From the NCBI RefSeq assembly GCF_963676685.1, contig NC_092344.1:110422001-110486000 (forward strand): a stretch of 64,000 bases of DNA. Reading direction: 5' to 3'. Each line of letters starts with the position of its first letter. The stretch's first letter is position 1. A program made the translations under genes and the position numbers. Positions 4,242-7,300 of this stretch are shown here, piece after piece. Under the pieces are notes generated by a model. That model made no database searches and was not told the DNA's origin. It saw nothing but the letters and a program-made list of their open reading frames with translations. This DNA is from Mytilus edulis. Taxonomy: Eukaryota.

Positions 4242-4395
4242 GTTTCTGTAGCCCGACCCAGCTGTGAAAGTATTAAAGGGGCTAACCTGTATATATCAGG
4301 CCTACCCAAGTCCTTGACACAGTTGGACTTGGAGCAAATGTTCTCCGATTGTGGTGAAATCATTACGTCAAGAATACTATATGACCAAAATACAG
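4242..4395 (+). CDS. elav: ELAV exon variant A (RRM1 beta4, linker, RRM2 N-half): [52 protein letters not shown]
   Basis: Acceptor attttcag at 4240-4241, donor G|gtacag at 4396. Length 154 nt, open frame, RNP2 motif LYISGL. Confidence 0.93.
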
Positions 4396-7300
4396 GTACA
4401 GAAAAAATGAGGGTTGCACAGAAAAAAGGGTCCCCAAAGAGTTTCATAGGGAGGGAATTTAGTCTACTAGGTTTAATTTGTATGATTTTAATTTTATTTT
4501 GATTTTTATTCATTCTTCGTCCTGTTTTTACCTTAGGTTTCCCTCGCACGACCAAGTAGCGAGAGTATTAAGGGTGCTAACCTTTATATTTGCAACCTGC
4601 CAAAGAATATGACCCAGAATGAATTGGAACTGTATTTTTCCCAGTGTGGGAGAATCATAACTTCTCGAATTCTTTACGATAATACAACAGGTCAGACTCG
4701 TGTCACGTTTTGGCAATGTTGTTATTTGATGCTTGCATGTAAACGTTTATTGTGACAAATTGCGAGGGCTGTTTATTTTTCTTATTACTATTTATTCAAT
4801 TATTATGATTCTCTTTTAATGTTACTTTTAATTGTTGAATTTAAATTGTTATTTTATCTATATTTATGTTTTTTATTTCCCTTTCTTGAGAGTTTTAGTT
4901 GATTAACAATATTGTTTGGCTTACAAGTTTGCCTCATATCATCTCAACTTTTTATACTATATCCATTAGCATGCTACCGTTCCATCATATTTACATGTGA
5001 TTCACTAATCAAAAATCTTTTCAGACATTTTCCACTTATAAGTTTTATTATTATCAGGTTTTGAGGATAAATAAAATTGAAATTGTTTGATGTGTATTTG
5101 AACATAAAACATTTCTGTTAAATGTTCAATCTGTTTCTTTAAATTTTACATCATAAACAGAAGCCAAACATTTCAAAGAAAAAGATTGAACATTTAACAG
5201 AATTATTTTACACTTCTGTTTATGATGTAAAATTTAGAGAAAGAAAGAAAAATAAATTAGGAACCAAGTATTAAATCAAACTTTGAAACAGTTCTTTGCA
5301 AAAAGTATAAAACATTCACAAACAGAAAAATCATAAAATACAGATTAATGAAAACAGTCCATACATGACTGAAATGAAATATTTCTATTTGCTTCCATAT
5401 GTGAATTGCTAGAAAATTCCAATTTCCAATATTTGCTTTCTCCATCCCATTTTATCTGTCTTGTCTTGAAATATGTTTTTATTCAAACACTTTGTCTTTT
5501 AGAGCATGCAATAAAATCAATGCTTTTATATTTACAACAAAGAAAGAGATTAACAGGCATACGTTCAGTGCAGTTTTAATGATTTAATCATTGAAATACA
5601 GACAAGCTAAAACCACAAAAGTTTTTTTTATAATTTTGTTCATATCTAAAGCAAGCTGAAAGGCCATAAAATTTATCAATATCATCATGAACCATGCACA
5701 AATTTCTTAGCTGTAACCCAGGTTTTGAATCAATACTCCTAACCCACTATAACCGCCACACAAATCAATTTTTCATTGATTTTTGTCTTTGAGTAACTAA
5801 TGATATTATTTGCTTTAAATGTAATGCACGGCAGACTGATCAAGTTATTCAAATTCTCTTCTCTTTATTATAGACTATTGATAAGACCAAACAAGCTTTT
5901 ATCTTTGTATTTCATTAAATAGATTTTCATTTAAAATTGATATTCCCTGGTAATGACGTTTGTTTTGTAATTTGCAAATAAGCTATCAATATTTGTTTTG
6001 GATGGTTGGATACAATTGAATACGTCTATGTAATAGGATATCATTATCAAATTGAGATTAAATTTTTTTCACTAGTGTCATCCCATTGCTACCATCTAAC
6101 TTAAAATAATACCGTAATGTAGCAGTAATTGAAAATTAATGAAAAATATGATATATTCAGTTCACAGAAATTGTATTGTGTTTTGTATCAAGGTTCTTAA
6201 ATGTTTATACATGTATATATATATATTCTTGGTTAACTAAATAAACCTCGGGAGTCGATCAATTAATTTACATGAAAAAAGATTTTCATTATAACTCACC
6301 CAAGGTCTTAAATGTAAAGCATGCAATGATTTCAATATTGAAGGTAAAAATGTGGTTACTTTTTATATAGATAGAACGATGGCGTAGAAATACAGTTTCA
6401 CATCAATCTGCTTGAAATCCAGGTTTTGTGTTCACCCTTCGCTTACAAGGATCTGACAATGCTCTGTTCTACTTTAAGTTTGAAAAACCAATCAGGATCT
6501 TCTGTTTTTAATACACCGTTTTACGGAATACATTATGGCATTACTTCCATTGGTTATCAACAACACTAAACTATTTTCATTAAACTTTGGTGACTTGTTT
6601 ATATCAATTGAAGAAAGCTTCTTTTCAATTCTATAAATTTTAAATTTTAGGTTTCCAAGTTGTTGGAGTTTGCATATATAAAAAGGATGAATTTCCAGTT
6701 TTTTCGACAATACTTAAATTTTCATTAAAATTCAGTAAGTTGTATATAGCTAGTGATTTTCCAGTTTTTCGACACTGGTTTATGTCCATTTATTAAGCTC
6801 CCATTAGTTTTTTTTTTATAAATTTCTGATGTAACATAAAAAGTCACATTGAGGGGTTTCAGAACTTTATTCGTTGAAAAAGTGGTGTGTGTCATGTGCT
6901 CTTTGGGCAGCTCTTTATTTCATAATGATACACACCTTCAAAAATTAAATTAATTTTAAAGGCTTAAATTTCATAGGTTGATGTAATATTTTTCATAACA
7001 AACAAGTAAGCAGGAGTGAAGTCAGATCCACATGAACGCACAGTCTGTATTTTAATCAGATTGTGTTATTCTTTTACACATTTACACACATCTTGTGTGT
7101 AATACGAAAATCTTTGTTCCCATACTTACAAAAACATTACATAATTTTTCTGGTTTTAGTGTAAACTTTTTTGATATATGGTAAAAAGATAGCTGTTTTG
7201 AAACACATATTTGCACAAGCATGGTTGTTGAATCTAATAAAAGCAATTAAATTTTTCATGGCTTAATAAATAATTTGAATCGTGCATTAATGAATCATTA

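What the first reader, a model, noticed from the sequence alone, without database searches (positions are those of the whole stretch)
4242..4690. Tandemly duplicated, mutually exclusive exons give an ELAV/Hu protein two alternative linker and RRM2 N-halves
Seen: two 154-nt exons 141 nt apart, both open, with the same phases and intact splice sites. The second is invisible in the ORF track. Including both gives G|GT TTC CCT CGC ACG ACC AAG TAG (stop 4557-4559); skipping both gives a stop at 7376-7378, so only one-of-two yields full protein. Many nucleotide differences are silent, yet the residue changes hit functional positions: VSVARPSC vs [11 protein letters not shown]2 LYISGL vs LYICNL, and helix [12 protein letters not shown] vs [12 protein letters not shown]. 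Established: RRM1-linker-RRM2 is the AU-rich-element binding unit of ELAV/Hu proteins. Inference: a tissue- or stage-specific switch in RNA-binding properties achieved by exon choice instead of gene paralogues. I do not know this to be described for a bivalve ELAV.
Basis: partly seen in the sequence, partly recalled or inferred. Interest (0 to 1): 0.85.

Follow-up and report, generated by a model that had tools for sequence, protein, structure and literature searches.

The report
Either-or exon pair in ELAV
A mussel gene for the RNA-binding protein ELAV holds two neighbouring copies of one exon and each mRNA uses exactly one; snails, chitons and probably worms and moss animals keep the same pair, so it is a real, very old switch whose purpose is untested.

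Summary
Confirmed. Exons 4242-4395 (A) and 4537-4690 (B) are both 154 nt, have the same phase and AG/GT borders, and are 141 nt apart. They are 66% identical in DNA and 37/51 in protein.

RNA-seq joins each exon to the same upstream exon and to 7361. No read or contig joins A to B. Using both gives TAG at 4557; using neither gives TAG at 7376.

The window is Mytilus edulis. RefSeq already lists A isoforms (X1, X3, X4, X8, X12) and B isoforms (X5, X9, X14), so the pair is annotated. Six literature searches found no paper describing it.

The new result is its age. Clean A/B isoform pairs that differ only inside this exon occur in 14 genes of 13 mollusc genera: bivalves, gastropods and a chiton. 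An annelid and a bryozoan show the same pattern indirectly. A-type exons form one clade (support 91/84). Synonymous sites between A and B are saturated (pS 0.82, pN 0.20).

Two residues separate A from B in all 16 pairs: one in helix alpha1 and one in the beta2-beta3 loop. The core RNA-contact motifs are the same in both.

A tissue-specific switch in RNA binding remains untested. Frame incompatibility, probably with NMD, enforces exclusivity. No RNA structure signal was found.

The parts
4242..4395 (+). Exon A (154 nt): end of RRM1 beta4, the inter-RRM linker, and RRM2 beta1, alpha1 and beta2 up to the beta2-beta3 loop. Used in RefSeq isoforms X1, X3, X4, X8 and X12.
   Evidence: Junction 4395>7361 is seen in 4 runs, and reads entering at 4242 carry the end of the upstream exon. 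Isoform typing. Secondary-structure mapping.
4396..4536 (+). Intron of 141 nt between A and B, GT..AG. It carries almost no RNA depth and is never removed as an A-to-B splice in the data.
   Evidence: (no 4395>4537 joint). No unusual fold (z = -1.05).
4402..4456 (+). G-run-rich element of about 55 nt just after the exon A donor. A second copy, about 89% identical, lies at 2720-2772. Its role is unknown; it may be an intronic splicing element.
4537..4690 (+). Exon B (154 nt), paralogous to A with the same phase. Used in RefSeq isoforms X5, X9 and X14.
   Evidence: Junction 4690>7361 is seen in raw reads of X24 (7 reads) and in an X11 contig. Reads entering at 4537 carry the same upstream-exon end. 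Isoform typing.
4557..4559 (+). TAG reached if A and B are both included.
7361..7595 (+). Constitutive exon: RRM2 beta3 (RNP1) to beta4, and the start of the hinge. It is the acceptor for both A and B.
7376..7378 (+). TAG reached if both A and B are skipped.
10255..10603 (+). Last coding exon: end of the hinge, RRM3 and the stop codon.
   Evidence: (RRM_1, E 3e-22). The loose end after 7595 matches the start of this exon.

Best explanation
This is a genuine pair of mutually exclusive exons in the multi-exon ELAV/Hu gene of Mytilus edulis. Shown: an old tandem duplication made two 154-nt exons. Each is spliced between the same two flanking exons, so every productive mRNA carries one of two versions of the linker and the first half of RRM2. 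Including both or neither shifts the frame into an early stop. The same A/B pair is present as clean isoform pairs across molluscs. Inferred: the pair also exists in annelids and bryozoans and therefore predates the split of these phyla. Transcripts with both or neither exon are removed by nonsense-mediated decay or give a truncated protein, and this alone is enough to make the choice exclusive at the protein level. Inferred with less confidence: the two versions keep the same core RNA contacts. They differ on the alpha1 helix face, at the residue before beta2, and in the beta2-beta3 loop. That would tune affinity, partner binding or multimerisation rather than base specificity. The choice would be regulated by cell type.
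For: Anatomy and frames. RNA: junction 4395>7361 is seen in X21 (5 reads), X24 (13 reads), an X11 contig and a 1788-nt X10 contig. Junction 4690>7361 is seen in X24 (7 reads) and an X11 contig. Loose ends before 4242 (8 reads) and before 4537 (4 reads) have an identical consensus that equals the end of the upstream exon. There is no A-to-B joint. The stranded reads fit a + strand gene. Annotation: contig length 126317657 ties the window to M. edulis RefSeq proteins, and A and B isoforms were typed. Conservation: in 14 same-length isoform pairs from 13 mollusc genera, every difference falls inside the exon (typing). An oyster genomic ORF (P0002) and a Mya gene model (P0223) show A followed by B on the DNA. 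The annelid pair P0270/P0436 and the Bugula pair P0013/P0433 differ only in this exon. Phylogeny: A-type exons form one clade with support 91/84. Selection: pS 0.82 (saturated) against pN 0.20 between A and B. Both Babylonia paralogues keep both exons. Positions 28 and 49 are disjoint between A and B in 16/16 pairs. Structure: secondary-structure mapping; homology to the HuR and HuD RRM1-2 structures.
Against: Only about 25 informative junction reads from two raw-read runs of unknown tissue were seen, so rare A+B or double-skip transcripts cannot be excluded. RefSeq isoforms are pipeline models. The tree has 52 columns and its support is moderate. Leu at position 28 also occurs in a scorpion and a bee sequence. 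No functional difference between the isoforms has been measured. NMD was not tested.
Confidence: 0.85

Rival explanations
1. Poison-exon or autoregulation reading: the second copy mainly serves to make an unproductive A+B transcript that is degraded, which lowers ELAV output. It would not serve to make a second protein.
For: A+B inclusion gives a stop 21 nt into exon B. ELAV/Hu proteins are known splicing regulators that act on U-rich introns (my own knowledge).
Against: No A-to-B junction was seen. B alone is spliced productively to both flanking exons. The B protein sequence is conserved across phyla with its own fixed residues, which a pure poison exon would not need.
Confidence: 0.06
2. 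Neutral redundancy: both exons are used, but the choice is stochastic and the two proteins are functionally equivalent.
For: The core RNP2 and beta2 residues are identical in A and B. No functional data exist.
Against: The pair has been retained since before the mollusc classes diverged, and in both Babylonia paralogues. Positions 28 and 49 differ between A and B in 16/16 pairs. Synonymous sites are saturated while pN is low. The A:B ratio differs between runs.
Confidence: 0.07
3. Artefact: an assembly duplication, or a decaying pseudo-exon that is never used.
For: None beyond the tandem arrangement itself.
Against: The copies are only 66% identical and their flanks are unrelated. Both are spliced in independent RNA runs. 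Both are present in many other species.
Confidence: 0.01

Closest known systems
Mutually exclusive exon pairs made by tandem exon duplication (a general class, for example in tropomyosins, ion channels and N-cadherin; my own knowledge, and PMC2655722 for arthropod N-cadherin)
   Same: The exons are adjacent and homologous, with the same length and phase. One of the two is used per mRNA. The frame breaks if both or neither is used. The pair is deeply conserved.
   Different: The host gene is itself a master splicing and mRNA-stability regulator, and the swapped piece is half of an RRM. I found no described case for ELAV/Hu.
Alternative splicing of the single bee ELAV gene elavl2 (PMC8553928)
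   Same: A single ELAV-family gene diversifies its protein by splicing inside the RNA-binding region instead of by paralogues.
   Different: Bees use cassette micro-exons in an RRM2 loop and in the hinge, plus exon skipping that truncates the protein. That paper reports no duplicated, mutually exclusive exons (0 occurrences of the term).
ELAV/Hu paralogue sets (vertebrate HuR versus HuB/C/D; Drosophila elav, fne and Rbp9; Aplysia ApELAV1 ubiquitous and ApELAV2 neuronal, bioRxiv 10.1101/2020.08.14.251389)
   Same: Two or more versions of a very similar RRM1-RRM2 unit exist within one animal.
   Different: Those are reported as separate family members. Here the two versions share every other exon of one gene. 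I could not test whether either Aplysia protein corresponds to an A or a B isoform.
Docking-site/selector RNA-pairing clusters (Dscam1 type; my own knowledge, and PMC9258826 as a listed hit)
   Same: They also give mutually exclusive choice among duplicated exons.
   Different: There are only two exons here. No complementary arm of 18 nt or more involves the A-B intron, and the local fold is not unusual (z = -1.05).

Membership tests
ELAV/Hu RNA-binding protein family | Three RRMs: RRM1 and RRM2 in tandem, then a hinge, then RRM3 | tested here: met
   The exon translations hit RRM_1. The full RefSeq isoform P0346 folds into three beta-alpha-beta-beta-alpha-beta units with disordered stretches at residues 1-69 and 238-304.
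ELAV/Hu RNA-binding protein family | Closest solved relatives are the Hu RRM1-2 units | tested here: met
   The best PDB sequence matches are HuR 4ED5 (E 9e-21), HuD 1FXL and HuC 1FNX, ahead of Sex-lethal.
Mutually exclusive exons by tandem duplication | Adjacent homologous exons of equal length and phase with intact splice sites | tested here: met
   154 nt each, AG/GT borders, 37/51 residues identical.
Mutually exclusive exons by tandem duplication | Each exon is spliced to the same upstream and downstream exons | tested here: met
   Junctions 4395>7361 and 4690>7361 are both seen, and the upstream loose-end consensus is identical at 4242 and 4537.
Mutually exclusive exons by tandem duplication | The two exons are not joined to each other in mature mRNA | tested here: met
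   No 4395>4537 joint appears in four runs. Depth is modest, so rare events are not excluded.
Mutually exclusive exons by tandem duplication | Isoforms differ only in the swapped exon | tested here: met
   In 14 same-length isoform pairs all differences fall inside the exon. In Mytilus there are 14 differences at residues 147-194, and the exon spans 145-196.
Exclusivity by frame incompatibility plus NMD | Exon length is not a multiple of 3, so both or neither gives a premature stop upstream of later junctions | tested here: met
   154 = 3n+1. The stops are at 4557 and 7376, both upstream of the 7595 and 10255 junctions. Actual decay of such transcripts was not tested.
Exclusivity by steric hindrance (very short intervening intron) | The intron between the two exons is too short to be spliced | tested here: not met
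   The intron is 141 nt. The branch point was not mapped.
Exclusivity by U2/U12 splice-site incompatibility | One intron has U12-type consensus sites | tested here: not met
   The donors after A, after B and after the upstream exon are ordinary GT sites without the U12 donor box.
Exclusivity by competing RNA pairing (docking/selector) | Conserved complementary intronic elements | tested here: inconclusive
   No arm of 18 nt or more involves the A-B intron, and the fold has z = -1.05.

The most novel reading that the evidence does not exclude
The A/B exon pair is a switch older than 500 million years and shared across Lophotrochozoa. It would give a single ELAV gene two RRM2 surfaces with different partners or RNA affinities. 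It would be used in a conserved cell-type pattern, for example neuronal versus general, and so do by exon choice what vertebrates and flies do with separate Hu/ELAV genes.
Probability: 0.25. Interest if true: 0.75.

Novelty: new member of a known kind. Interest (0 to 1): 0.55.

Why it matters
ELAV/Hu proteins are central regulators of neuronal mRNA processing, and ELAV is the standard neural marker in mollusc and annelid development. A strictly either-or exon pair inside RRM2, kept across mollusc classes and probably in annelids and bryozoans, has three consequences.

- These animals always make two ELAV proteins from one gene, and probes, antibodies and knock-downs used so far do not distinguish them.
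- Two residues have stayed different for hundreds of millions of years. One is in helix alpha1 and one is in the beta2-beta3 loop. They are natural markers of a functional surface on RRM2 that lies outside the classical RNA-contact motifs.
- The pair offers a clean comparison between diversification by exon duplication and diversification by gene duplication in one protein family.

The finding is not a new kind of mechanism, and the isoforms are already in RefSeq.

Tried and rejected
I could therefore not fetch orthologous genomic loci, compute codon-level dN/dS per exon across species, or look for conserved intronic pairing elements. I used protein isoforms and read-through ORFs instead.
- The exon-B search limited to short proteins gave only fragments and no exact B ORF.
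- The 50%-representative search collapses isoforms. It was useful mainly for the genomic read-through ORFs.
Exons were searched one by one by reference, and full-length comparisons used database proteins returned by the tools. Exons were joined only inside a local script, to read the frames.
It was rewritten to derive them from the window.
- Local RNA fold of 4180-4760: not different from shuffles.
- Inverted repeats: only AT-rich chance-like pairs, none in the A-B intron.
- Genome search with the G-run element found only itself and missed even the known second copy, so it says nothing about copy number.
- Literature searches found no description of an ELAV mutually exclusive exon. Subscription journals are not covered.
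- I considered and rejected an assembly artefact, a pseudo-exon, independent cassette exons (the frames forbid them), steric hindrance and U12 incompatibility.

Full report
THE OBSERVATION. Exons A (4242-4395) and B (4537-4690) are both 154 nt. Each follows a pyrimidine tract plus AG and precedes GT, and both are open in the same phase. They share 102/154 bases and 37/51 residues. Both translations match the first half of Pfam RRM_1. The 60 nt on either side are no more alike than chance. Only these two copies exist in the window plus 30 kb upstream. In the whole genome the only further match is a 48%-identical stretch in another gene. Reading A then B meets TAG at 4557-4559, and skipping both meets TAG at 7376-7378. 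Exon B lies only in a 48-aa ORF, which explains why an ORF track misses it.

THE GENE. The window is G000:C1:110422001-110486000. That contig is 126317657 bases long, the same length as the contig that carries the RefSeq proteins named ELAV-like protein 1 of Mytilus edulis, and their exon A is identical to the window's. The two RRM1 exons lie just upstream of the window; the second ends at window position -73. After A or B come 7361-7595 (RRM2 second half and start of the hinge) and 10255-10603 (RRM3 and the stop). The nearest solved structures by sequence are the HuR, HuD and HuC RRM1-2 units.

RNA EVIDENCE. I laid two raw-read RNA runs and two sets of RNA contigs on 4150-7650.
- Junction 4395>7361 is present in all four: X21 5 reads, X24 13 reads, an X11 contig, and a 1788-nt X10 contig.
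- Junction 4690>7361 is present in X24 (7 reads) and in an X11 contig. A short X10 contig also covers exon B.
- Reads that enter at 4242 (8 in X24) and at 4537 (4 in X24) carry the same preceding letters, which are the end of the upstream exon.
- No read or contig joins 4395 to 4537, and the 141-nt intron has almost no depth.
- The stranded run has all first mates on the minus strand, which fits a plus-strand gene.
- Many small runs from at least six studies hold about 0.65-0.68 of the sampled words of 4242-4690, close to the exonic share of that stretch (308/449). This suggests that both exons sit in many transcriptomes. It is a hint only.
- The A:B ratio differs between runs (5:0 and 13:7 reads; contig depths 34:2.3 and 9.3:3.6). 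I do not know the tissues.

ALREADY ANNOTATED. RefSeq isoforms X1, X3, X4, X8 and X12 of M. edulis carry A, and X5, X9 and X14 carry B. M. californianus has the same split, with an identical B peptide. X8 and X9 have the same length and differ at 14 residues, all at positions 147-194, while the exon spans 145-196.

AGE OF THE PAIR. Typing of cluster members gives clean A/B isoform pairs, with every difference inside this exon. The taxa are:
- Bivalves: Mytilus, Crassostrea, Mizuhopecten, Mya, Dreissena.
- Gastropods: Haliotis, Gigantopelta, Patella, Pomacea, Babylonia, Physella, Biomphalaria.
- Chiton: Liolophura.

Babylonia has two ELAV genes on different contigs, and each keeps both exons. 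A genomic read-through ORF that matches oyster sequences (P0002) contains the end of A, about 80 codons of intron, and then B. A Mya arenaria GenBank model (P0223) strings A and B together. Both show the tandem order on the DNA of other bivalves.

Outside molluscs the evidence is indirect. A spionid annelid transcript and Malacoceros ELAV1 are identical over about 190 downstream and 75 upstream residues but differ at about 17 positions inside the exon, one being A-type and the other B-type. Two Bugula neritina models share 136 identical N-terminal residues and then diverge, one into B and one into A. A-type exons are also seen in Owenia, two sipunculans, Paralvinella and the bryozoan Watersipora.

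On a 52-column tree, all A-type exons of molluscs, annelids and bryozoans form one clade (ultrafast bootstrap 91, SH-aLRT 84). B-type exons remain unresolved among other protostome ELAV exons. This fits a single duplication before these phyla split, with B the more ancestral-looking copy. Between A and B in the window, synonymous sites are saturated (pS 0.82) and pN is 0.20. Among molluscs A is more conserved than B: mean pairwise identity is 0.89 against 0.83.

WHAT DIFFERS. I mapped the exon onto a model of isoform X8 built from a 44-sequence alignment; pLDDT is about 90 in the RRMs.
- Positions 1-4: end of RRM1 beta4.
- Positions 9-12: a short linker helix.
- Positions 15-19: RRM2 beta1.
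- Positions 27-35: alpha1.
- Positions 40-47: beta2.
- Positions 48-52: the beta2-beta3 loop.

Across 16 A/B pairs, positions 11-17 and 40-46 are invariant in both types. These include the RNP2 aromatic and the beta2 strand. Two positions never share a residue between types. Position 28 in alpha1 is always Leu in A and polar or small in B. Position 49 in the loop is Gln or Pro in A and Asn, Thr or Ser in B. Position 19, the last residue of beta1, is always Ser in A and Cys in 10 of 16 B exons. Position 39 is Lys or Arg in 13 of 16 B exons and in one A exon.

The lasting difference is therefore on the helix face and in a loop, not in the classical RNA-stacking residues. The Asn in the Mytilus B RNP2 is lineage-specific. 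From this I infer a modulation of affinity, partner binding or multimerisation rather than a change of base specificity. This is an inference and has not been measured.

HOW EXCLUSIVITY IS KEPT. It is shown that 154 = 3n+1, so both or neither exon gives an early stop upstream of later exon junctions. I infer that such transcripts are degraded by NMD or yield a truncated protein.
- Steric hindrance is unlikely, because the intervening intron is 141 nt.
- The donor sites are ordinary GT sites, not U12-type.
- I found no sign of competing RNA pairing. No inverted repeat of 18 nt or more touches the A-B intron, and the local fold is ordinary (z = -1.05). Without orthologous introns this remains open.
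It is a candidate regulatory element of unknown role.

KNOWN OR NEW. Mutually exclusive exons made by tandem duplication are a well-known kind, and both isoforms are in RefSeq. Six full-text searches found no paper that describes such a pair in any ELAV/Hu gene. The bee elavl2 study reports micro-exons and exon skipping but no duplicated exclusive exons. Aplysia work speaks of a ubiquitous ApELAV1 and a neuronal ApELAV2 as two family members; I could not test any relation to A and B. I therefore file the pair as a new member of a known kind. The added result is that it is conserved across mollusc classes and very probably across Lophotrochozoa.

LIMITS. 

Noticed in passing
just upstream of the window (window -222 to -73; locus L002 about 9778-9927): RefSeq isoforms of the same gene differ by an insert of 0, 8 or 20 residues in the RRM1 beta2-beta3 loop. 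Pomacea isoforms differ by an 11-residue insert at the same spot. This looks like a second conserved splicing hot spot, reminiscent of the bee RRM2-loop micro-exons.
   Followed up: partly
L007:1234-2250 (G000:C2, about 63521403-63522419): An uninterrupted 338-aa ORF encodes a divergent three-RRM ELAV-like protein that is 48% identical to exon A over the matching stretch. It appears to be an intronless second family member, possibly a retrogene.
   Followed up: partly
window 2720-2772 and 4402-4456: A direct repeat of about 55 nt, about 89% identical and rich in G triplets. One copy starts 7 nt after the exon A donor, and the other lies 1.7 kb upstream in the preceding intron. The whole-genome search was too insensitive to tell whether it is a dispersed repeat.
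   Followed up: partly
window 6440-6930: RNA reads and contigs match short pieces of the 4691-7360 intron with several mismatches and run on into unrelated sequence (tables 3, 7, 8). They are most likely transcribed copies of a dispersed repeat from elsewhere, not part of this gene.
   Followed up: no
protein P0223 (Mya arenaria GenBank model) and P0001: These public gene models include both copies of the duplicated unit in one protein. P0223 joins them with an 8-residue bridge. They are annotation errors caused by the tandem exons.
   Followed up: yes
proteins P0451 and P0491 versus P0489 and P0490 (scallops): Scallop A isoforms come with or without one extra Ala at the junction between exon A and the next exon (375 against 374 aa). 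This suggests a 3-nt alternative splice site there.
   Followed up: no
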